In this document: positions 3,474-64,000 of the stretch, one piece after another
Numbering within the stretch: position 1 is the stretch's first letter
How the letters are laid out: each line of letters begins with the position of its first letter
Virus record (IMG/VR): IMGVR_UViG_3300046542_000248
Location: 182,902 to 246,901 of that record
Length of the DNA stretch: 64,000 nt
Direction: 5' to 3' (one strand)
Made by a program: the position numbers and the translations under genes
The notes under the pieces: generated by a model
What the model saw: the letters and a program-made list of their open reading frames with translations, nothing else
The model's database searches: none
Told to the model about the DNA's origin: nothing

Positions 3474-3941
3474 ATGAAAATCACTATTAACAAAACAGAA
3501 ATGGTAAAAATCAACGGACTGGTAAAAACAATCTTTGAAAAGGTAGTCGCTGATCTTGGATTAACGGCAGGAATTGAAGCTGGTGCTTTCGATGTAATCG
3601 TTGATATGTTCAACCAAGAAGGTCCGGTTGATACTGGAACTGCAATTGTCACTGTATCTGTAACTGGCGAAGAATTAACAGTTGAAATCAAGGAAGAGTT
3701 CCTTGATAACTACTTAGAATTAATGAACGACATTGCAACTGACGTGCTGGCATTTGCAGTTACACATAAAGAAATCCTAATGCTTGGTGCTAGAAAAGCT
3801 GTAAACTCAATCGTTGGAAAAATGAGAGCGGTAGTAATGTCCACAATGTACAAATACTTCTTGCCAATCATGGAACCAGGTAAAGCGCTTATGGTTACAG
3901 TTCAAGGAAGATTCGAGAAGTTCGTTGAGAAATGCCTATAA
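3474..3941 (+). CDS. hypothetical early protein
   Basis: 155 aa; strong SD taaggagg. Confidence 0.75.
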   Translation: MKITINKTEMVKINGLVKTIFEKVVADLGLTAGIEAGAFDVIVDMFNQEGPVDTGTAIVTVSVTGEELTVEIKEEFLDNYLELMNDIATDVLAFAVTHKEILMLGARKAVNSIVGKMRAVVMSTMYKYFLPIMEPGKALMVTVQGRFEKFVEKCL

Positions 3942-4048: not shown

Positions 4049-4164
4049 TATAGAGTATCCCACATAGATGATTAATGCCATCTTAATTTATTTTATCAGA
4101 TGGACCAATAATCCAGAGATACTGGTGAGGTTTATGAAAGGAATCTATTGTGGGTGATTTAGCT

Positions 4165-4482
4165 ATGAAGTACGAGTTTAAAGGTATTGATTTTGATATT
4201 GATGAAGAGAAAGATGAGAATGGAGTTGTAGTATTTTCATGTATTAACGAAGCACATATACATCCAGTATTTCTCCGTACAAACAATGTAAACATGTTTC
4301 AGTACAAAATTGGAGATGGAGATGACGACGAAGTTGAATGGGGTTGCTGCACAAGCAAGACTCAACTTGTAGAAAATTTTATAGATGCCGCTAATATATG
4401 TGATAGACTAGATGGTGATTTCACTATTCCTAGTTGGTATGATAGCACTGATGCTTTACTGCATTACATAGAGTGGGTATGA
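4165..4482 (+). CDS. hypothetical acidic protein
   Basis: start moved to the ATG after ggtgat. Confidence 0.65.
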   Translation: MKYEFKGIDFDIDEEKDENGVVVFSCINEAHIHPVFLRTNNVNMFQYKIGDGDDDEVEWGCCTSKTQLVENFIDAANICDRLDGDFTIPSWYDSTDALLHYIEWV

Positions 4483-20989: not shown

Positions 20990-22750
20990 ATGGATCGTCA
21001 ATACTTCCGTCAAAACATTTCTAACCCGCAAACATTTCACGGGACAGTTTCCCATGTATTCGATGTACTTGAAAACACAGTTGGTGCTACATATGGACCA
21101 GGTGGTACTCACAATATCTTCATGATGGGACCTGGAGAACTTAGTTCATCCAAAGATGGGCTTGAGAATTTGACTATGATGAAAATGGACAGCACAATTG
21201 CTCGTACAGTTCATCAAATGGCTATCGAAGTTGCTCAGCGTCAAGCATCCATCGTTGGTGATGGTACAACTTCCGCTGTTCTTATAATGGCTCAAGTGTA
21301 CAAACAGCTTCGTACTTCCAAAGCATTGTGGAATAAATATACATCTTCGACGATTCATAATGCAATGAATCAAATCCAAGATGGTATTATCTCTATGCTT
21401 AAAAACGCTGCATCAAAAATCAATACCGATGAAGAAGCATTCCACCTTGCGTACACTTCAACAGATCGCAATCGTGATCTAGCGGATGTTATCGCAAAGG
21501 TTTACAAAATCACTGAAAACTTTGCTGATACGAATATTATCCTTGACTATAGTGCAACGGAACAAACGTATCATTCCAATAGCAAAGGTCTATCAATCAT
21601 GGGTCGTATGATGAACCAAGCGTTCAATAACTACGATATCGAAACTTGTAAATTGAAAGAAGTTGAAGTTGTCGTAGTTGATGGTGCTGCTACTATCACT
21701 AATGACATCCTTGAATATGCAAATCAATTGAAACTTAGCGGTAAATCCTTGTTGATTATCTGCTCTGGTATTAAGAACGAAAACTTCTATCGTTATATTG
21801 AAGCAGTTGCTCAAAAGCAACCTGCATTCTTGCATAACATGGCAGTAGTATACAGCGATGCTAATACATTGCAAAAGAAAGATACTTACTATGATTTGAT
21901 TAAATCATCTGGCTGCGCAATCCTTGAAGAAGGCGTTGAGCTGAACAGTGAAACAATTCGTGAAATCTCCAAAGGGTATGCTCAAAACGTATTGATCAAA
22001 GACAAGAAAATGACTCTTGCTGGGTTTAACCAAACTCCAGAGTTAGAAACTTGGATTGAATCAATTGCTGCTCAAATTGCAGAGATTCACACAATGAACG
22101 ATAATCCGGAAGTATCCAAAGAAGATGTTCTTCAATCTCAAATGAAGATCAATTCGTTGAAAGCTCGCCATGCTAAACTTAAAGATGGTACTACTACTAT
22201 CTATGTAGGTGGCGAAACTAGTCAACGTAAATCTATTAACTATCGTCTTGTCGAAGATGGTGTTAAAGCGTTACAAGCTGCTTTGAACACTGGTTACTTC
22301 GTAGGGTGTAATACTACTACGATGAATGTTATCTATCAACTTCTGATCAAACAGAAGCAATCTAAGGGTAATCTAGATGATGTTTACGGACAACTTCTAA
22401 CGATTATTCTTACCGCTTACATTAATGTATACAAGAAGTTGGTTACAAACCGTGTAGCAACAGCTACCGAAGAAGCATTCTATCAAATGATTATCAATGA
22501 AAAATGTGCTGATATTATCAAGCCAATGGTTGATGATGTATCAGGTATTGAAGTTGATGTCAAGTATGCTGGAACTCCTGTATTCTGCGTAGTAAATCTA
22601 GCTGATGGTGATGAACTGGCTTCTGTAGTAATCAATCCTGCATCCACTGATACACTTATTGTGGAAAAAGCAATTGATGCTGCCTTGATTCTCGCTACTG
22701 CTAATACAATCATGACCGATGAGCATAATGAATTTGAATCTGTCCTTTAA
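20990..22750 (+). CDS. groEL: phage GroEL-like chaperonin (AR9 gp228/EL gp146-like)
   Basis: TYGPGG, SKDG, GDGTTSA, IYVGGET, EDGVKA, AIDAALILAT. Confidence 0.93.
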   Translation: MDRQYFRQNISNPQTFHGTVSHVFDVLENTVGATYGPGGTHNIFMMGPGELSSSKDGLENLTMMKMDSTIARTVHQMAIEVAQRQASIVGDGTTSAVLIMAQVYKQLRTSKALWNKYTSSTIHNAMNQIQDGIISMLKNAASKINTDEEAFHLAYTSTDRNRDLADVIAKVYKITENFADTNIILDYSATEQTYHSNSKGLSIMGRMMNQAFNNYDIETCKLKEVEVVVVDGAATITNDILEYANQLKLSGKSLLIICSGIKNENFYRYIEAVAQKQPAFLHNMAVVYSDANTLQKKDTYYDLIKSSGCAILEEGVELNSETIREISKGYAQNVLIKDKKMTLAGFNQTPELETWIESIAAQIAEIHTMNDNPEVSKEDVLQSQMKINSLKARHAKLKDGTTTIYVGGETSQRKSINYRLVEDGVKALQAALNTGYFVGCNTTTMNVIYQLLIKQKQSKGNLDDVYGQLLTIILTAYINVYKKLVTNRVATATEEAFYQMIINEKCADIIKPMVDDVSGIEVDVKYAGTPVFCVVNLADGDELASVVINPASTDTLIVEKAIDAALILATANTIMTDEHNEFESVL

Positions 22751-42912: not shown

Positions 42913-44127
42913 ATGAGCAGCATTTTCGGTTATGATCGTGGCGGAGCACTTAGTTCAACTCAATTGAAATCTCTTGCAACGTATGAAGGAGGTAAGTTCA
43001 GTAAGTTCTTTATTCGTTATCTTGCTGAATCTTATTCTTGGAAATACTTCTCCTGGCCCGAGGTAGAAAGACTTTTGGCAGAAGGTTATATGATCGGATC
43101 TGTATTCGAAGACGGTGCAGATAGTATTAACGAAGGTTATGAAGCTGGTAAAGCGGCTGCTGGTAGATCCAAAGCAACTGCAATCCGCGTTGGTCAACCT
43201 AAGAAAAGTGGAATCTTCTATGCAGTAGATTATGATGCACCTGCATCTGATTACGATGCAATTGAAGCATTCCTTAAAGGGGCACAAGAAGTTCTCGGTG
43301 ATGACTTCTTTGCTGGTGTTTACGGTAAGTATGATGTAATTGAAGAAATGGGTAAACGGAAAGCATGTAAATACTTCTGGCAAACTCTTGCTTGGAGTCG
43401 TGGTAAACTTTCCGAATTTGCTGATATGTATCAATACAAAATTGATACTCCTGCAAACGGAATTAACGTTGACTTCAATGAATGTTTCAATCCTGAGTTC
43501 CTTTGGGGTCAATACAAAGAACCAGTTCCAGTTCCACCTGTTGTAGTGGTACCTCCGAAGATTGTAACTCTTTCGATGTATGATGATGTACCAGTAGATC
43601 ACTGGGCAGCATCGGCTATTGAAAAAGCTTTTAAGAAAAACTTTATGAGTGGCGTTTCGGATAGAAAGTTTGGTCTTAACCAAGAAGTTACTCGTGAACA
43701 ACTTGCGGTAGCTCTTGATAAAGCTGGTCTTTTAGAATCTGATGCTTTTGCTAAAACATCTGCAAGCTTAGTATATAGTGATGTGCCTGAATCTCACTGG
43801 GCAGCATCTGCTATTATGAAAGCTTTTAACAAAAATGTTATGAGTGGTGTTGGTGGTGGTAAGTTTGGTCTGGGTGAAGAACTCACTCGTGAACAATTTA
43901 CTACAGTTCTAGCTAACCTTGGTCTTATTACAATGGGTGAATCCTATTGGAAAATTCCAGATATTTACACAGATGTGCCGTCCGATCACTGGGCAGTTAA
44001 ATCCATCAAAAACGCATACCTTAAAGGTGTGATTGTTGGTGTGGGTGAACACCAGTTCGGTATGGGTGAAGCTGTAATGCGCGAACAACTTGCAAAAGTA
44101 TTCGACAACATGGGTAAACTGGATTAA
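42913..44127 (+). CDS. peptidoglycan hydrolase: GH25-like (DUF1906/Rv2525c-type) domain + three SLH domains
   Basis: FIRYL, FYAVDYD, GVYG, FWQTLAWS; three DVP..HWA..I...G....FG....TREQ repeats. Confidence 0.85.
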   Translation: MSSIFGYDRGGALSSTQLKSLATYEGGKFSKFFIRYLAESYSWKYFSWPEVERLLAEGYMIGSVFEDGADSINEGYEAGKAAAGRSKATAIRVGQPKKSGIFYAVDYDAPASDYDAIEAFLKGAQEVLGDDFFAGVYGKYDVIEEMGKRKACKYFWQTLAWSRGKLSEFADMYQYKIDTPANGINVDFNECFNPEFLWGQYKEPVPVPPVVVVPPKIVTLSMYDDVPVDHWAASAIEKAFKKNFMSGVSDRKFGLNQEVTREQLAVALDKAGLLESDAFAKTSASLVYSDVPESHWAASAIMKAFNKNVMSGVGGGKFGLGEELTREQFTTVLANLGLITMGESYWKIPDIYTDVPSDHWAVKSIKNAYLKGVIVGVGEHQFGMGEAVMREQLAKVFDNMGKLD

Positions 44128-53104: not shown

Positions 53105-53114
53105 TATATATTAT
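53105..53114 (+). promoter_or_regulatory. putative early promoter TATATATTAT
   Basis: exact motif. Confidence 0.65.
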
Positions 53115-53145
53115 TACTATAGATAAAGAGAAAGGAATTGATCAT

Positions 53146-58920: not shown

Positions 58921-60090
58921 ATGTTTAAAGATCTTTTTGAAAGTTCCACAGGTGCAAGCGCTGGTACTCTGCAACTTGAGTCTGCATTTGATTCCGCTGA
59001 ATTCTCTCTTTACCTGAACGAAACTGATTCCACAATTAATGGATTGGTTGATTCCTACCGCGGCGTAATGACAGAAGCTCTTACTGAGAGCGCTGGCATT
59101 ATGAACGAAAGCGTTAACCTTGTTCTTGAACAAGCTAACGAGCATGTTGGTAACAAAATCGTAGCAGCTTTGAAAAAGCTGTGGAACTGGATCGTTAAGA
59201 TCGTTGATAGCTCTATCAACTTCGTAATGACTCTAGTAACAAGCAACAAAAAATTCATCGAAAAGATCAAACCGGAAGTTGCTAAAAAGAACCTTTCCGC
59301 TGAAGATCTTGCAAAAATCACGATGACTTCGTATAACTACAAGCCACAAGCTATCAGCACTGAAAAAGTGACGACTGTATTGGGTGAAGTTGATGCTGAA
59401 GCTCGTGCTGATTACAGCGCAGCAAACAAAGAAAAGCTTGACAAAGTTGTAGAAACTTACAACGAAAACAAACGTAAATCTGCTGGTTGGGAAAAAATCT
59501 CCCTGGCAAACCGTTTGACAAACGTTAGCATGCATGAGGTACAAGACTGGGCACGTTATAAAGACGAGCTTCGTGTATCTCTTCAAGGCGGCGAGAAGAA
59601 AACTACGAAGACTTTCTCCATGGATTTCTTCAAAGTTATCGAAACTTATTCCCAAAATGCCGAAGCAATCAAAGGCATTATGTCCAAATCCAAAGAAGAT
59701 TTCAAGAAAACCATCGACCACATCATCCAAAAAGCTGGATATGCTAAGGCCGAAGGTAAAGGCGAAGGTGCTGATGCTAAAGCTGCATCCGGTCGCGTAG
59801 CTTTCTTGAACTACTTGCGTGCAAGAACTGCTGCTACAGCAGATGCGTTTGCAGAATTGATGAGCATGAAGCTCTCCATTCTTAAACGTGAAGTAGGCGA
59901 AGCTCGTTCATTCTGTATGCATGCGGCTCGCTACAATCCGAAAAAAGCAGAAGGCGCTGCATCCGTGAAAAACGAATCCGCCGCTGTTATTCCTTTCGAT
60001 CCATTATTCGAAGATGCTGAAGAAGTAACTGAAGCTGGTTCGCTTACTGAAGGTGCACAAGGCGGCGCTGCTGCTTCTGTAACTTTCTAA
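58921..60090 (+). CDS. abundant internal head protein (MFKDLFES N terminus)
   Basis: strong SD taaggagg, own promoter and terminator, high-expression-type codons, ES sites at both ends, LWNWIVKIV helix. Confidence 0.65.
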   Translation: MFKDLFESSTGASAGTLQLESAFDSAEFSLYLNETDSTINGLVDSYRGVMTEALTESAGIMNESVNLVLEQANEHVGNKIVAALKKLWNWIVKIVDSSINFVMTLVTSNKKFIEKIKPEVAKKNLSAEDLAKITMTSYNYKPQAISTEKVTTVLGEVDAEARADYSAANKEKLDKVVETYNENKRKSAGWEKISLANRLTNVSMHEVQDWARYKDELRVSLQGGEKKTTKTFSMDFFKVIETYSQNAEAIKGIMSKSKEDFKKTIDHIIQKAGYAKAEGKGEGADAKAASGRVAFLNYLRARTAATADAFAELMSMKLSILKREVGEARSFCMHAARYNPKKAEGAASVKNESAAVIPFDPLFEDAEEVTEAGSLTEGAQGGAAASVTF

Positions 60091-60137: not shown

Positions 60138-60205
60138 ATTGGATTAAAAAGTATAAGTAGCCAGTATAGGCTACTTATTTTTTCGTCTTTATCTTCTTAT
60201 TTACC

Positions 60206-61250: not shown

Positions 61251-61311
61251 TAAAAAGTGAATAGTTCCTATGCCTAGGGAACTATTCATTTCTATATTTT
61301 ATTTTAAGTAA

Positions 61312-61332: not shown

Positions 61333-62301
61333 ATGAAGGGTGGAATTATCTTGAGTATCTTCTCTAAAATTGATACAGGATTGTATATGGACAAGGATAT
61401 TTCTGAAGAAATCACGACCATGTTAGAATCTATAACCAGCACCGATGCACTTATTAATGCATACATGGTAGAAAGTTCTACTATTATTAATGAGGGTGCC
61501 ATTACCGACAGCATTCAAGCTGTTATTGCTAAGCTTATTAGCTTTATCAGGGGATTGTATGAGAAATTTATTTCTCTATTCTTGACCCAATCAGATTATA
61601 TCAAGTATATCCTTGATAAACATTCTGCAAGATTGCATGAATTAACTGATGCAGAATTGAAGACTATTGTATATCAATACACTCAATTCAATATCAGTAA
61701 AGATCTTCCAATATTTGGATATATTGACAATGTGCAAAAGTACATTGATAAACTATCCTCTTTCAAAATTAGCTTCTCAGATATTGAAGACTTTAAAGAT
61801 ATCTTCTCTGAAGAATTATCTGTGATCCGAGGTAAAATTCTTGGTAAAAATGAGAAAATCGCTGAATATGACTTTATTGCTAAAACTCGTGGAATCTTTA
61901 GACCGAATACTGAAGTATTTATGAAGCATATGTCTAAAGCTGATCTGAATAGCATCATTAGCGGGGTTAGTAGTTATAAGAATACTAAATCCATGATCGA
62001 ATCTAATAAAGATTCTCTTACTAGAGAATATAATAAATACTTTAAAGTAATATCCAGTCTAATGAGCGTTAAGTATTCTGATGATGCTCTTGGAGCTACG
62101 ATTACTAATAATAACGGCGATAAAGAGACTGTTGATTTGATTACTGTGAATAAGCATAAGACTTATCAATCATTAATCGTATCTTTCATCTCTCAAATCG
62201 GAGAAGTTTACTCCATTGTATATCGTGAAAAACTTCTTGCTATTAAAGATAAATACGAAATGGAAATGACTATACTATCTCAAGTAATCAGATTGGTGTA
62301 G
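61333..62301 (+). CDS. internal head protein (related family)
   Basis: MLES, MVES, INEG sites, then amphipathic IAKLISFIRGLYEKF. Confidence 0.6.
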   Translation: MKGGIILSIFSKIDTGLYMDKDISEEITTMLESITSTDALINAYMVESSTIINEGAITDSIQAVIAKLISFIRGLYEKFISLFLTQSDYIKYILDKHSARLHELTDAELKTIVYQYTQFNISKDLPIFGYIDNVQKYIDKLSSFKISFSDIEDFKDIFSEELSVIRGKILGKNEKIAEYDFIAKTRGIFRPNTEVFMKHMSKADLNSIISGVSSYKNTKSMIESNKDSLTREYNKYFKVISSLMSVKYSDDALGATITNNNGDKETVDLITVNKHKTYQSLIVSFISQIGEVYSIVYREKLLAIKDKYEMEMTILSQVIRLV

Positions 62302-62302
62302 T

Positions 62303-63805
62303 ATGTTTGACGATCTCTTTGTAGAGGCGAATCTTGTCCTCAATACGGATGATATCTACTATAAATTTGATGAGTGGAAACCTCAGAAAAATAAGAATAT
62401 CCTGTTAGTTACTGGATTATCTGGCAGTGGTAAATCCACATTAGCTAATGATTTATATGAAAAATATAAAGCTAAAGTTGTGTATCTGGATGCATTTGAT
62501 CAGCTAGATACTTCTGCTGGTAATACTTATATGATTGAGGATTTCTTTGCTAAGAAGAAAATAGATTATACTCAATATAAAAGAGTATGGGATATACCTG
62601 ATATAGAATATGATAATATCTTAAATGAATTCTTTGAATTCTGTGTATCAGAAATATATAAAGATCCACACAATCTATACATTATAGAAGGATTACAACT
62701 GTATGCTTATATTGATAAAGCTGCAATTGAAAATCTTCCTATGGTTATTAAAGGAACCAGTTATCTCACTTCTCAATATAGAAGATTAATGAGAGATAAT
62801 AGTGATTCCAAAAATGTAATTAGACCGATAATCTCTGAATTAAAGCATATTGGTTTAGCTGCATTTAAAATCAATCTTAAAGATCAACGAATATTAAAGA
62901 AACTTAAAACAGAGCTACAGCCTAAAAAGAGAGGATCTGATGGAATGTTTGGAGATTTGTTAAGAGAGGCTTCGATGCCTAATGAGTATTACCTACCTAA
63001 TGATGGTGGGAAGATCAAAGCATTTGAGGATGCTTTTGGTGATGATGAAATTAAGAAAAGTATTGCTTACGGTTTCTCTAGTAGTCATGAATATGATGCA
63101 CCAGAGAAAAAGAAAGATGCAGTTAAATCCTGTATCAAATTCGTAAACAACTACGACTGGAAGAAACGTGATCATAAAGTTGAAGATATCGAAGCATTTA
63201 ATAAGCCTCTCAATATGAAGAAGGTTTATAACATTGCTAAGACTATCGAAGAAAAAGGAAATACTGAGCCGTTGATTACTGTGGATAAGATTCACGGATT
63301 CAACTGGCAGTCCAAAGGTAAATCAATTCTCACTGACGGTAATCACCGACTTGGTGCTATTAAAGTATTGGAACAGAAAACATGTCCAGTATATCACGGT
63401 ATATATAGTGGTAATGCTGAGAGAGATCATCAGGATTTCCTTCCTACTATTGAAGATGATAGTGAGGTGGAAAGTGATGAAGAAAATTCAATGCATGAAT
63501 CAAGCAACTTTATTACTGAAGCTGTATTTGAAAATGTAGATAATGTGAAGAACTTCTTCATCGAGTCTGCTAACGAATTCAAACTTCTTCAAGAAGCAAG
63601 TAAGAAAAGAAAGATTGAACGTGTTTCTTTAACTGAAGAGGAACGAGCAGCGGTTGAAGCTAAGTATGGTAAGAACCATGTACTATTTGCTAAGGACGGG
63701 AAGTCCGGTAAGTACTACTGTGCAGCCAGAGCAACGAGTAAATTATATGATTCACCAACTGATATCCCTATGGATGCGGTTAGATTTGTAGCAAGTACAG
63801 CTTAA
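62303..63805 (+). CDS. P-loop kinase + ParB/Srx-like domain fusion with MFDDLF tags
   Basis: LVTGLSGSGKST; IIEGLQ; ILTDGNHRL; internal MFGDLLREA. Confidence 0.75.
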   Translation: MFDDLFVEANLVLNTDDIYYKFDEWKPQKNKNILLVTGLSGSGKSTLANDLYEKYKAKVVYLDAFDQLDTSAGNTYMIEDFFAKKKIDYTQYKRVWDIPDIEYDNILNEFFEFCVSEIYKDPHNLYIIEGLQLYAYIDKAAIENLPMVIKGTSYLTSQYRRLMRDNSDSKNVIRPIISELKHIGLAAFKINLKDQRILKKLKTELQPKKRGSDGMFGDLLREASMPNEYYLPNDGGKIKAFEDAFGDDEIKKSIAYGFSSSHEYDAPEKKKDAVKSCIKFVNNYDWKKRDHKVEDIEAFNKPLNMKKVYNIAKTIEEKGNTEPLITVDKIHGFNWQSKGKSILTDGNHRLGAIKVLEQKTCPVYHGIYSGNAERDHQDFLPTIEDDSEVESDEENSMHESSNFITEAVFENVDNVKNFFIESANEFKLLQEASKKRKIERVSLTEEERAAVEAKYGKNHVLFAKDGKSGKYYCAARATSKLYDSPTDIPMDAVRFVASTA

Positions 63806-63831
63806 TATATTATGATGAGAGGGTGATAACT

Positions 63832-63975
63832 ATGAAACGTGGAAACCTTAAACGTTTGTCAGTAGTTAGTGCAATTATTTTGATGGCTTCATTGAGCGGA
63901 CCAATAACAATTCCGGCGATTGAAGCTGAACGGTTGCGTATGCCTACAAATGAATACGCAAAGGAGATTTCATAA
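63832..63975 (+). CDS. 47-aa secreted pro-peptide (Phr/AimP-like architecture)
   Basis: MKRGNLKR n-region, hydrophobic h-region, AIEA cleavage site; SD gagagggtga; AATATATTAT at 63804-63813. Confidence 0.6.
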   Translation: MKRGNLKRLSVVSAIILMASLSGPITIPAIEAERLRMPTNEYAKEIS

Positions 63976-64000
63976 GATGGATACAGTATTTCTTTCACCA

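What the first reader, a model, noticed from the sequence alone, without database searches (positions are those of the whole stretch)
63804..63975. Unannotated 47-aa secreted pro-peptide resembling Phr/AimP signalling precursors
MKRGNLKRLSVVSAIILMASLSGPITIPAIEA-ERLRMPTNEYAKEIS has a Sec signal with an AxA site and a 15-aa mature tail, a strong SD and an early-type motif. That architecture matches RRNPP quorum-peptide precursors. No TPR receptor lies upstream; the next ORF (ATG 63977, SD inside this gene) is cut by the window edge. Inference: a lytic jumbo phage emitting or jamming host or phage peptide signals.
Basis: partly seen in the sequence, partly recalled or inferred. Interest (0 to 1): 0.65.

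Follow-up and report, generated by a model that had tools for sequence, protein, structure and literature searches.

The report
Conserved small exported phage peptide gene
The 47-codon reading frame is a real, conserved gene of a soil jumbo-phage lineage that makes a tiny protein with a secretion leader, but it has no partner receptor, so the idea that it is a quorum-type signal stays unproven.

Summary
The ORF (window 63832-63975, +) is real. It has a strong Shine-Dalgarno site. An equivalent 45-49-aa ORF was found at 11 more distinct loci. Nine of those sit in the same slot in related jumbo-phage contigs. Two sit in unrelated Bacillales-phage contexts. dN/dS is about 0.1-0.2 for the closer pairs, and there is one copy per genome.

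All members have a basic N terminus, a 13-residue hydrophobic core, a polar turn region and a conserved P-A-I-E-A-E-R-x-R block. That block offers a rule-conforming signal-peptidase site in 11 of 12 members: after Ala29, after Ala32, or both.

The 'early-type motif' is a chance partial match. Only the 8-mer core fits the genome's AR9-type early promoter, and no relative has it.

The downstream gene was recovered because the contig ends overlap. It folds like jumbo-phage virion proteins, not a TPR receptor. The upstream gene is a P-loop NTPase. No TPR_12, TPR_8 or RNPP_C match exists in the complete genome, and there is no Pfam, NCBIfam or PHROG match for the peptide.

Verdict: this is a new family of Sec-leader microproteins of phages of S-layer-bearing Firmicutes. 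It is probably cleaved to a 15-18-aa extracellular peptide, or possibly stays as a membrane anchor. It is not an RRNPP or arbitrium member, and its function is open.

The parts
63832..63975 (+). ORF47 coding sequence (47 aa plus stop), protein P0004
   Evidence: Homologues were found at 11 further distinct loci. dN/dS is 0.21 for L009 vs L018 and 0.12 for L005 vs L007. Single copy in the genome.
63817..63827 (+). Shine-Dalgarno site of ORF47 (GAGAGGGTGAT)
   Evidence: Read from the sequence. Every homologue has a GGAGG, GGGGG or GGTGG site 6-9 nt before its ATG.
63806..63813 (+).
   Evidence: PWM score is -4.6, against 18 or more for the 43 true sites. 1,814 genome positions score as well. The motif is absent before all homologues. 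The AR9 paper reports that one mismatch inactivated a predicted early promoter (PMC5312081).
63832..63855 (+). n-region, residues 1-8 (MKRGNLKR, four basic residues)
   Evidence: Members carry 2-5 Lys/Arg within residues 1-9.
63856..63894 (+). h-region, residues 9-21 (LSVVSAIILMASL); Ser10 and Leu21 are invariant in the family
   Evidence: Alignments A2 and A3. Kyte-Doolittle mean is 2.05 over residues 9-23.
63895..63927 (+). c-region with two candidate type I signal-peptidase sites: after Ala29 (I-P-A|I) and after Ala32 (I-E-A|E)
   Evidence: A rule-based -3/-1 scan of 12 members found the Ala29-column site in 9, the Ala32-column site in 7, and at least one of them in 11. SignalP was not available.
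63919..63939 (+). Most conserved block of the family, I-E-A-E-R-L-R (residues 30-36)
   Evidence: Mean pairwise BLOSUM62 is 2.5 here, against 1.9 (n-region), 1.8 (h-region), 0.4 (c-region) and 0.8 (rest of tail). Synonymous codons vary between loci, so the constraint is on the protein.
63961..63967 (+). Shine-Dalgarno site (AAGGAGA) of the downstream gene, inside the last codons of ORF47
   Evidence: Read from the sequence. In most relatives the purine-rich SD (GAAGAGAGG) encodes the tail's ...EER ending.
63977..64000 (+). Start of the downstream gene (P0001, 339 aa; continues at the contig start, L002:120-1139)
   Evidence: The AF2 model has pLDDT 69.5. BFVD matches are jumbo-phage virion and head proteins. 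There is no TPR fold.
62303..63805 (+). Upstream gene P0002 (500 aa): N-terminal P-loop NTPase, a central ParB-like hint, and a C-terminal domain shared with AR9-like phages
   Evidence: The gene order is conserved in related contigs.
61333..62301 (+). P0003 (322 aa), first gene of the conserved four-gene block
61255..61291 (+). Terminator-like hairpin (15 pairs plus a T-rich tail) that bounds the four-gene block upstream
63858..64000 (.). 143-bp overlap of the contig's two ends (assembly of a circular or permuted genome); one mismatch at 63984

Best explanation
ORF47 is a genuine, single-copy accessory gene of a clade of virulent, AR9-like jumbo phages. These phages infect S-layer-bearing Firmicutes from soil. 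The gene encodes a 47-aa pre-peptide.

Shown: it lies in a conserved four-gene block (P0003, P-loop NTPase P0002, ORF47, virion-protein-like P0001). It has no credible promoter of its own. It starts 26 nt after the upstream stop and ends 1 nt before the next ATG.

Inferred: it is co-transcribed with these genes, probably late, and translationally coupled to the downstream gene.

Inferred from the n/h/c architecture: the basic N terminus and 13-residue hydrophobic core send the peptide to the Sec translocon with the N terminus inside. Type I signal peptidase then most likely cuts inside the conserved P-A-I-E-A-E block, after Ala29 or Ala32. That would release a 15-18-aa charged peptide outside the membrane. 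Its N-terminal I-E-x-E-R-h-R segment is the best conserved part of the family.

Homologues also occur beside a family-A DNA polymerase gene in an SPO2/Emery-like phage. Another follows an EAR antiterminator RNA in an element that carries a tyrosine recombinase. So the peptide probably acts on its own, outside the cytoplasm, rather than with its genomic neighbours. What it binds is unknown. It is not half of an RRNPP receptor-peptide pair.
For: - The gene is real. It is conserved in frame, with start, SD and a length of 45-49 aa, at 11 further distinct loci. dN/dS is 0.21 and 0.12 for the closer pairs. The antisense frame is not consistently open.
- Architecture and cleavage sites.
- There is no own promoter. 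The early-promoter PWM fails, there is no AACA-N6-T[AG] site nearby, and the nearest bound is a terminator at 61255-61291.
- The neighbourhood is virion-related. PHROG 'virion structural protein' hits lie upstream, and P0001 has a virion-protein-like fold.
- Host type: the endolysin carries two SLH domains, GGAGG-type SDs are enriched, and the DNA polymerase is nearest to those of AR9, PBS1 and BpSp.
- The phage looks virulent: neither complete genome has a tyrosine recombinase.
- The peptide is independent of its neighbours: stray members occur in L022 and L023.
Against: - No signal-peptide predictor could be run. The uncharged stretch from residue 9 to 30 is 22 residues long, enough for a membrane anchor.
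- One lineage (L008/L016) has no rule-conforming cleavage site. Two members have Val or Leu at -1 of the better conserved site.
- There are no expression data: only one DNA run holds the sequence.
- The host is inferred, not known.
- A free 15-18-aa peptide has no demonstrated target.
- The C-terminal residues are partly dictated by the overlapping SD of the next gene.
Confidence: 0.5

Rival explanations
1. The peptide is an uncleaved signal-anchor: a bitopic membrane microprotein with the N terminus inside and a 15-18-residue tail outside. It stays in the infected cell's membrane and acts there. For example, it could bind a host membrane protein, block DNA entry of superinfecting phages, or tune lysis timing, as other small phage and bacterial membrane proteins do.
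For: - The uncharged stretch is 22 residues in most members, and Kyte-Doolittle values are compatible with a membrane helix.
- Ser10, Leu21 and small residues at positions 13 and 19-20 are conserved inside the hydrophobic core. That is more constraint than a disposable leader needs.
- L008/L016 has no usable cleavage site.
- An anchored tail would stay on the producing cell, which suits a late-expressed accessory gene.
- In L022 the homologue overlaps a second 36-aa membrane ORF.
Against: - Polar or charged residues (Lys23 in L008; His/Asn in L005; Asn-Thr-Gln-Thr in L007) follow the 13-residue core.
- A -3/-1-conforming site is kept in 11 of 12 members. Two alternative arrangements each preserve a site, which looks like selection for cleavage.
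- The gene is 20 kb from the endolysin, so it is not a lysis-cassette holin.
Confidence: 0.3
2. This is the first reader's reading: the cleaved peptide, or a shorter fragment of it, is a diffusible cue. It would be re-imported by Opp or sensed at the surface, and it would mimic or jam a host or phage RRNPP-type peptide signal. The receptor would be encoded elsewhere, in the host or in another phage.
For: - The pre-peptide is small and Sec-type, which meets RRNPP criteria 1-2 (PMC10075063).
- By general knowledge, Sec-led linear peptides under 20 aa in Firmicutes are documented mainly as signals.
- The tail differs between lineages but is conserved within one. In L009 vs L018 the last 12 codons show 0 non-synonymous and 4 synonymous changes (p = 0.07 only).
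- The family is shared between virulent jumbo phages and temperate-type phages.
- Cross-talk between phage peptide systems is documented (PMC13220667).
Against: - No receptor was detected in any of the three gene contexts. Neither neighbour has a TPR hit, and P0001's fold is not TPR-like; P0002's middle could not be modelled.
- No TPR_12, TPR_8 or RNPP_C match exists in the complete genome; the complete relative has no TPR_8.
- There is no similarity to AimP or Phr families.
- The best conserved part is the start of the tail, not a C-terminal 5-10-mer. The C termini lack the RGA-type ending and are partly set by the next gene's SD.
- A virulent phage has no lysis-lysogeny decision to inform.
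Confidence: 0.12
3. The peptide itself has no function. The short ORF exists only to carry ribosomes to the downstream virion-protein gene (translational coupling), or it is a chance ORF.
For: - The stop lies 1 nt before the next ATG, and the next gene's SD is inside the ORF.
- The same tight arrangement holds in most relatives.
- The C-terminal residues mirror the SD sequence.
Against: - Conservation is at the amino-acid level, with synonymous variation, including the leader architecture and the I-E-A-E-R block.
- Homologues occur before quite different genes (a DNA polymerase A gene; a small membrane ORF).
- In L009/L018 the next gene has its own SD after the stop, yet the tail is fully conserved.
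Confidence: 0.05
4. The ORF is the frameshifted N terminus of a longer secreted protein.
For: The next gene starts 1 nt after the stop, in another frame.
Against: - The downstream protein starts at a conserved Met1 with its own SD in all seven homologues.
- The relative frame of the two genes is 0, 1 or 2 in different loci, and the spacer varies from 1 to about 20 nt.
- The small ORF keeps its stop everywhere.
Confidence: 0.01

Closest known systems
AimP propeptide of the arbitrium system (SPbeta-like temperate Bacillus phages)
   Same: It is phage-encoded. It is a small pre-pro-peptide with a Sec-type leader, and the short C-terminal part ends up outside the cell.
   Different: - aimP lies directly downstream of its receptor gene aimR. 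The mature signal is the last 6-10 residues, mostly ending in RGA, and the system serves a lysis-lysogeny decision (PMC13220667).
- Here there is no receptor gene, no RGA-type ending, no sequence similarity and no integrase.
- The conserved part is the start of the tail.
Phr propeptides of Rap-Phr cassettes and other RRNPP propeptides (PapR, NprX)
   Same: The length, the Sec leader, and a 15-20-aa exported pro-region that extracellular proteases could trim.
   Different: The defining adjacency to a 250-500-aa TPR receptor (PMC10075063) is absent in all three gene contexts and in the whole genome. There are no NCBIfam or Pfam hits.
Small bitopic membrane regulators of bacteria (for example the 47-aa MgrB; reviewed in PMC12648545). 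This comparison comes from general knowledge and was not tested here.
   Same: The size, a single hydrophobic segment with the N terminus inside, and a short extracytoplasmic tail. They act alone by binding a larger membrane protein.
   Different: Those proteins are not cleaved and have no SPase-type c-region. Most are chromosomal. There is no homology.
Phage superinfection-exclusion and host-takeover membrane proteins (T4 Imm and Sp, lactococcal Sie2009, SPO1 gp56). This comparison comes from general knowledge.
   Same: They are small, phage-encoded, exported or membrane-anchored accessory proteins. They are not tied to neighbouring genes and are found in both virulent and temperate phages.
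   Different: Those proteins are longer (about 80-170 aa) with folded or longer extracytoplasmic parts. There is no homology, and SPO1 gp56 is an early gene.

Membership tests
RRNPP quorum-sensing pair (signature of PMC10075063) | 1. The propeptide is small (10-100 aa) | tested here: met
   47 aa here; the family ranges from 45 to 49 aa.
RRNPP quorum-sensing pair (signature of PMC10075063) | 2. The propeptide is secreted through Sec (SignalP Sec/SPI) | tested here: inconclusive
   The n/h/c architecture is present and -3/-1-conforming sites occur in 11 of 12 members by a rule-based scan. SignalP was not available, and a signal-anchor is not excluded.
RRNPP quorum-sensing pair (signature of PMC10075063) | 3. 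The receptor is 250-500 aa | tested here: inconclusive
   The neighbours are 500 aa (P0002) and 339 aa (P0001), so both are in range by length only.
RRNPP quorum-sensing pair (signature of PMC10075063) | 4. The receptor carries TPRs | tested here: not met
   - P0002 gives P-loop NTPase hits only, with no TPR. Its AF2 model is too poor for a fold search of the middle part.
- P0001 has no TPR hit. Its model shows long helices plus a small beta domain and matches jumbo-phage virion proteins, not Rap, NprR, PlcR or AimR structures.
- TPR_12, TPR_8 and RNPP_C are absent from the whole genome, with positive controls working for the TPR models.
RRNPP quorum-sensing pair (signature of PMC10075063) | 5. 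The receptor and propeptide genes are direct neighbours | tested here: not met
   No receptor candidate lies next to the small ORF in the jumbo-phage context, in L022 or in L023.
Arbitrium AimP | aimP lies downstream of aimR; the mature peptide is the last 6-10 aa, typically ...RGA; the phage is temperate | tested here: not met
   - No aimR-like gene is present.
- The C termini are EIS, ECA, RAF, RID, ERV, PGI, GKE and GRP.
- No integrase is found in G000 or G001.
- There is no NCBIfam hit.
Type I (Sec/SPase I) signal peptide | A basic n-region, a hydrophobic h-region, and a polar c-region with small or aliphatic residues at -3 and -1 and no Pro at +1 | tested here: met
   The n-region has 2-5 Lys/Arg. 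The h-region core is 13 residues. Gly, Pro or Asn follow it. Sites occur after Ala29 and/or Ala32. Actual cleavage is not testable with these tools.
AR9-type early (virion RNA polymerase) promoter | AAATATATATTAT-N6-G with near-perfect match (PMC5312081) | tested here: not met
   Only TATATTAT matches. Four of the five upstream positions and the start-site G do not match. The PWM score is -4.6.
Pfam phiKZ_IP (for the downstream gene P0001) | Score at or above the gathering threshold of 27 bits | tested here: not met
   The score is 12.6 bits, E = 0.079, and the genome-wide search found nothing significant. Only a weak fold resemblance to jumbo-phage virion proteins remains.

The most novel reading that the evidence does not exclude
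A receptor-less, Sec-exported peptide made by virulent jumbo phages and shared with temperate-type phages of the same hosts. It would act as a diffusible cue or decoy, read by receptors encoded elsewhere (in the host or in other phages). That would be one-sided eavesdropping or jamming in phage-host peptide communication by a phage that has no lysogeny decision of its own.
Probability: 0.12. Interest if true: 0.8.

Novelty: new member of a known kind. Interest (0 to 1): 0.42.

Why it matters
Small exported phage proteins are often missed by gene callers. Three of the related contigs had no call here, and one had a wrong-frame call. Few such proteins have known roles.

This family is a clean test case. 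It is conserved and single-copy, with a clear leader and a conserved motif at the start of its exported part. It occurs in both virulent jumbo phages and temperate-type phages of soil Bacillales.

If the tail is released, it would be one of very few candidate diffusible peptides from a strictly lytic phage. If it stays anchored, it adds to the little-known set of phage membrane microproteins. As it stands, it is an ordinary but previously undescribed accessory gene family, not a demonstrated communication system.

Tried and rejected
- Pfam, PHROGs and NCBIfam scans of the peptide and all family members found nothing.
- tblastn of the peptide and of P0001 against GenBank phages found nothing useful. 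megablast of the region found nothing.
- The word-based protein search with the peptide found only itself.
- The ESM Atlas feature search gave a best score of 0.79, below the lead threshold.
Bacterial genomes were therefore not scanned for prophage copies.
- The search for related loci with single P0001 in viral contigs found nothing. The alignment version worked.
- P0001 vs P0003 paralogy was not supported. There is only a weak N-terminal similarity of P0001 to the product of window 58921-60090 (E = 0.003).
- phiKZ_IP membership of P0001 was not supported.
- The PDB Foldseek search for P0001 found nothing below E = 0.001. The top rows are long-helix toxins at TM 0.1-0.25, which is meaningless.
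- The AF2 model of P0002 had pLDDT 49, so it was not searched.
- The sequencing-run search found one DNA run from a rhizosphere metagenome, probably the source, and no RNA run. Read laying was therefore not used, and expression is untested.
- The antisense 62-aa ORF (63810-63998) was rejected, because that frame is not consistently open in relatives.
- A force-sensing arrest-peptide idea (SecM or MifM-like) was rejected by reasoning. Only 26 residues separate the hydrophobic core from the stop, too few for the core to leave the ribosome tunnel before termination.
- An AgrD-like reading was rejected: there is no conserved central Cys or Ser thiolactone residue.
- A lysis-cassette holin was rejected because the gene is 20 kb from the endolysin.
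Full report
**1. The observation**

The window holds an ATG-initiated ORF at 63832-63975 on the + strand. It encodes exactly the quoted 47 residues.
- It starts 26 nt after the stop of the upstream gene (TAA, 63803-63805).
- It is preceded by GAGAGGGTGAT (63817-63827), a strong match to the Firmicute anti-SD with good spacing.
- Its stop lies 1 nt before the ATG (63977) of the next gene, whose SD (AAGGAGA, 63961-63967) is inside ORF47.
- An antisense ORF of 62 aa overlaps it. That frame is not kept open in relatives.

**2. The genome**

The window is the last 64 kb of a 246,901-bp virus contig rated 100% complete.
- The contig's last 143 bases repeat its first 143, with one mismatch. The assembly therefore closes on itself, and the 'cut' downstream gene can be read whole (339 aa, P0001).
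- The genome has 35% G+C.
- It encodes a split multisubunit RNA polymerase, a GroEL-like chaperonin, and a DNA polymerase about 27% identical to those of Bacillus phages AR9, PBS1 and BpSp.
- It carries about 43 copies of AAATATATATTAT-N6-G upstream of genes. This is letter for letter the AR9 early, virion-RNA-polymerase promoter consensus (PMC5312081).
- The AR9 late consensus AACA-N6-T[AG] is enriched in upstream intergenic DNA: 2.77 per kb against 0.43 per kb in coding sequence.
- No tyrosine recombinase is present.
- The endolysin carries two SLH domains, and GGAGG-type SDs dominate.
- The only sequencing run that holds the DNA is a rhizosphere metagenome.

My inference is a virulent AR9-like jumbo phage of an S-layer-bearing soil Firmicute. 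The host itself is not identified.

**3. Is the ORF a gene?**

Yes.
- The peptide is a singleton by word search, but the downstream protein has relatives at 42-66% identity.
- Every contig that carries one has the same order: a P0003-like gene, a P0002-like gene, a small ORF, then a P0001-like gene.
- The small ORF is 46-49 aa everywhere. It has its own strong SD, starts about 14-30 nt after the upstream stop, and ends 1-20 nt before the next ATG.
- Gene callers missed it in three of these contigs and called a wrong frame in one.
- dN/dS is 0.21 (L009 vs L018: 10 synonymous, 8 conservative non-synonymous changes) and 0.12 (L005 vs L007).
- The relative frame of the small ORF and the next gene is 0, 1 or 2 in different loci. 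The next protein keeps its own Met1. This rules out a frameshifted N terminus.
- A profile of nine members, searched against 1.84 billion representative proteins, found 11 proteins. Nine are small proteins of this family, ORF47 itself among them; two are longer repetitive proteins that I left aside. Three of the nine were new:
  - One is in the same jumbo-phage slot (L021).
  - One (E = 2e-5) is on a contig with an ArpU-like regulator, an epsC/EAR antiterminator RNA, a second overlapping 36-aa membrane ORF and a small tyrosine recombinase (L022).
  - One (E = 8e-4) lies just before a family-A DNA polymerase gene that is 62-68% identical to those of Brevibacillus phage Emery, Bacillus phage SPO2 and Paenibacillus larvae phages (L023). 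Emery and LunBun lack such an ORF at that place.
- The gene is single-copy in this genome and in a complete 207-kb relative. It is absent from the AR9-like phage Internexus.

**4. Anatomy of the product**

All members share the following:
- Met1, then 2-5 Lys/Arg within residues 1-9.
- A 13-residue hydrophobic core with invariant Ser10 and Leu21.
- A 7-9-residue polar or turn-prone segment rich in Gly, Pro, Asn, Thr and Gln.
- A block with consensus P-A-I-E-A-E-R-(V/I/L)-R, followed by about 10 variable, charged residues.

The block is the best conserved part. Mean pairwise BLOSUM62 is 2.5 there, against 1.9 (n-region), 1.8 (h-region), 0.4 (c-region) and 0.8 (rest of the tail). Synonymous codon variation within the block shows that the constraint is on the protein.

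A rule-based scan required -1 in A/G/S, -3 in A/V/S/T/I/L/G/C, and no Pro at +1. It gave these results:
- A site after the Ala29 column in 9 of 12 members.
- At least one of the two in 11 of 12.
- Members that lose one site keep the other.
- L008/L016 has neither.

This is the classic Gram-positive Sec/SPase I pre-peptide layout. That layout, a basic n-region, an h-region, helix breakers at -4 to -6 and the -3/-1 rule, is established knowledge from von Heijne and from Tjalsma et al. 2000. I did not re-derive it here.

However, residues 9-30 form a 22-residue uncharged stretch, which could also span the membrane as an uncleaved anchor. I could not run SignalP. I put cleavage at about 0.6.

**5. 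Expression context**

- Four of the five conserved bases upstream of the core do not match. The start-site G is also missing.
- The PWM score is -4.6, against 18 or more for true sites, and 1,814 genome positions score as well.
- In AR9 a single mismatch inactivated a predicted early promoter.
- No relative has the motif. Their spacers are too short for any promoter.
- No late-consensus site lies on the + strand from 60900 to the contig end.
- A 15-bp terminator-like hairpin at 61255-61291 precedes P0003, and a strong early promoter follows P0001 at genome position 1201.

The unit is therefore P0003-P0002-ORF47-P0001. Genes upstream hit PHROG 'virion structural protein' families. Late expression is my inference. 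There are no RNA data.

**6. The neighbours are not receptors**
- P0002 (500 aa) has an N-terminal P-loop NTPase domain, a ParB-like hint (and the DGNHRLG motif by eye), and a C-terminal 75-residue domain shared with AR9-like phages. Its AF2 model was too poor (pLDDT 49) to search.
- P0001 modelled at pLDDT 69.5 as long helices plus a small beta domain.
  - BFVD matches are jumbo-phage virion, structural-head and internal-head proteins, including an AR9 virion protein. They are weak (TM 0.3-0.5) but consistent.
  - No PDB match falls below E = 0.001, and no TPR protein appears.
  - Pfam phiKZ_IP is below threshold.
- TPR_12 and RNPP_C are absent from the whole genome, and TPR_8 from both complete genomes. 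The control genomes responded to the two TPR models; RNPP_C passed its cut-off in only 1 of 14 controls.

**7. Interpretation**

What is shown:
- It is a real, conserved, single-copy small gene.
- The product has Sec-leader architecture.
- It sits in a tight operon with virion-module genes.
- No receptor partner was detected in any context.
- The family also occurs in two unrelated phage contexts, which suggests the product works on its own.

What is inferred:
- It is exported with the N terminus inside.
- It is probably cleaved within the conserved block.
- It is probably expressed late.
- It probably acts outside the cytoplasm.

If cleaved, a free 15-18-aa peptide would diffuse away from a monoderm cell. 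It has no positive support beyond architecture. There is one faint pherotype-like pattern: the tail differs between lineages but is identical between L009 and L018 (0 non-synonymous, 4 synonymous changes; p = 0.07).

If it is not cleaved, it is a membrane microprotein whose exposed tail could serve exclusion, lysis timing or control of a host membrane protein.

My estimates:

| Reading | Probability |
|---|---|
| Exported and cleaved accessory peptide of unknown target | 0.5 |
| Uncleaved anchor | 0.3 |
| Signal or jamming peptide | 0.12 |
| Coupling-only ORF | 0.05 |
| Frameshift artefact | 0.01 |

**8. Comparison and novelty**

It works like a Sec-type pre-pro-peptide. It is not a member of the RRNPP, Phr or AimP systems, because the defining receptor features were tested and not met (criteria from PMC10075063; AimP features from PMC13220667).

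It is a previously undescribed sequence family with no Pfam, NCBIfam or PHROG model. It belongs to a known general kind, the small exported phage accessory proteins. Interest is moderate. It would be high only if the diffusible-signal reading were shown.

All translations used genetic code 11.

Noticed in passing
window 63858-64000 = genome 1-143: The contig's two ends overlap by 143 bp, with one mismatch at window 63984 (C vs T; Thr3 vs Ile3 of the downstream protein). This indicates a circular or circularly permuted assembly, with a population variant. IMG/VR lists the record as 'linear'.
   Followed up: yes
whole genome, e.g. window 53106-53125; genome 1201, 23198, 76435: About 43 copies of AAATATATATTAT-N6-G lie 25-60 nt upstream of genes. 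This is identical to the AR9 early (virion RNA polymerase) promoter consensus, although protein identity to AR9 is only about 27%. The AR9 late consensus AACA-N6-T[AG] is also enriched in upstream intergenic DNA.
   Followed up: partly
window 42913-44127 (+): The endolysin combines an Rv2525c-like glycoside-hydrolase domain with two S-layer-homology (SLH) domains. This points to a host whose wall carries the polymers that bind SLH domains.
   Followed up: partly
window 20990-22750 (+): A phage-encoded GroEL-like chaperonin (PHROG 5725, E = 7e-55).
   Followed up: no
L022 3601-3730 (+): An epsC/EAR processive-antitermination RNA (Rfam RF01735, 49 bits) lies on a phage-like contig. It sits between an ArpU-like regulator gene and the stray family member (4139-4276), which overlaps a second 36-aa membrane ORF (4263-4373).
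   Followed up: partly
window 62303-63805; L008 1674-3820: The upstream protein P0002 (P-loop NTPase plus a ParB-like part) is one 500-aa gene here but two genes (237 and 447 aa) in a 187-kb relative. Its last 75 residues occur as a stand-alone 80-aa protein in the AR9-like phages Internexus and Goe21.
   Followed up: partly
L005 1632-1772, L006 1652-1792, L007 3851-3997, L008 3839-3979: Automatic gene calls missed the small ORF in three related contigs. In L008 they called a wrong-frame 30-aa ORF (3820-3912) instead.
   Followed up: yes
window 61255-61291 (+) and 60153-60178: Strong terminator-like hairpins (15 and 10 pairs) separate blocks of the virion-gene region. The first bounds the four-gene block that contains ORF47.
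   Followed up: partly
window 58921-60090 (+) vs L002 120-1139: There is a weak N-terminal similarity (E = 0.003, 37% identity over 68 residues) between P0001 and the 389-aa product of a gene 4 kb upstream. This may mark a family of paralogous head proteins.
   Followed up: no
window 63810-63998 (-): A 62-aa antisense ORF overlaps ORF47. It is longer than ORF47, and a naive longest-ORF caller picks it instead. It is not conserved as an open frame in relatives.
   Followed up: yes
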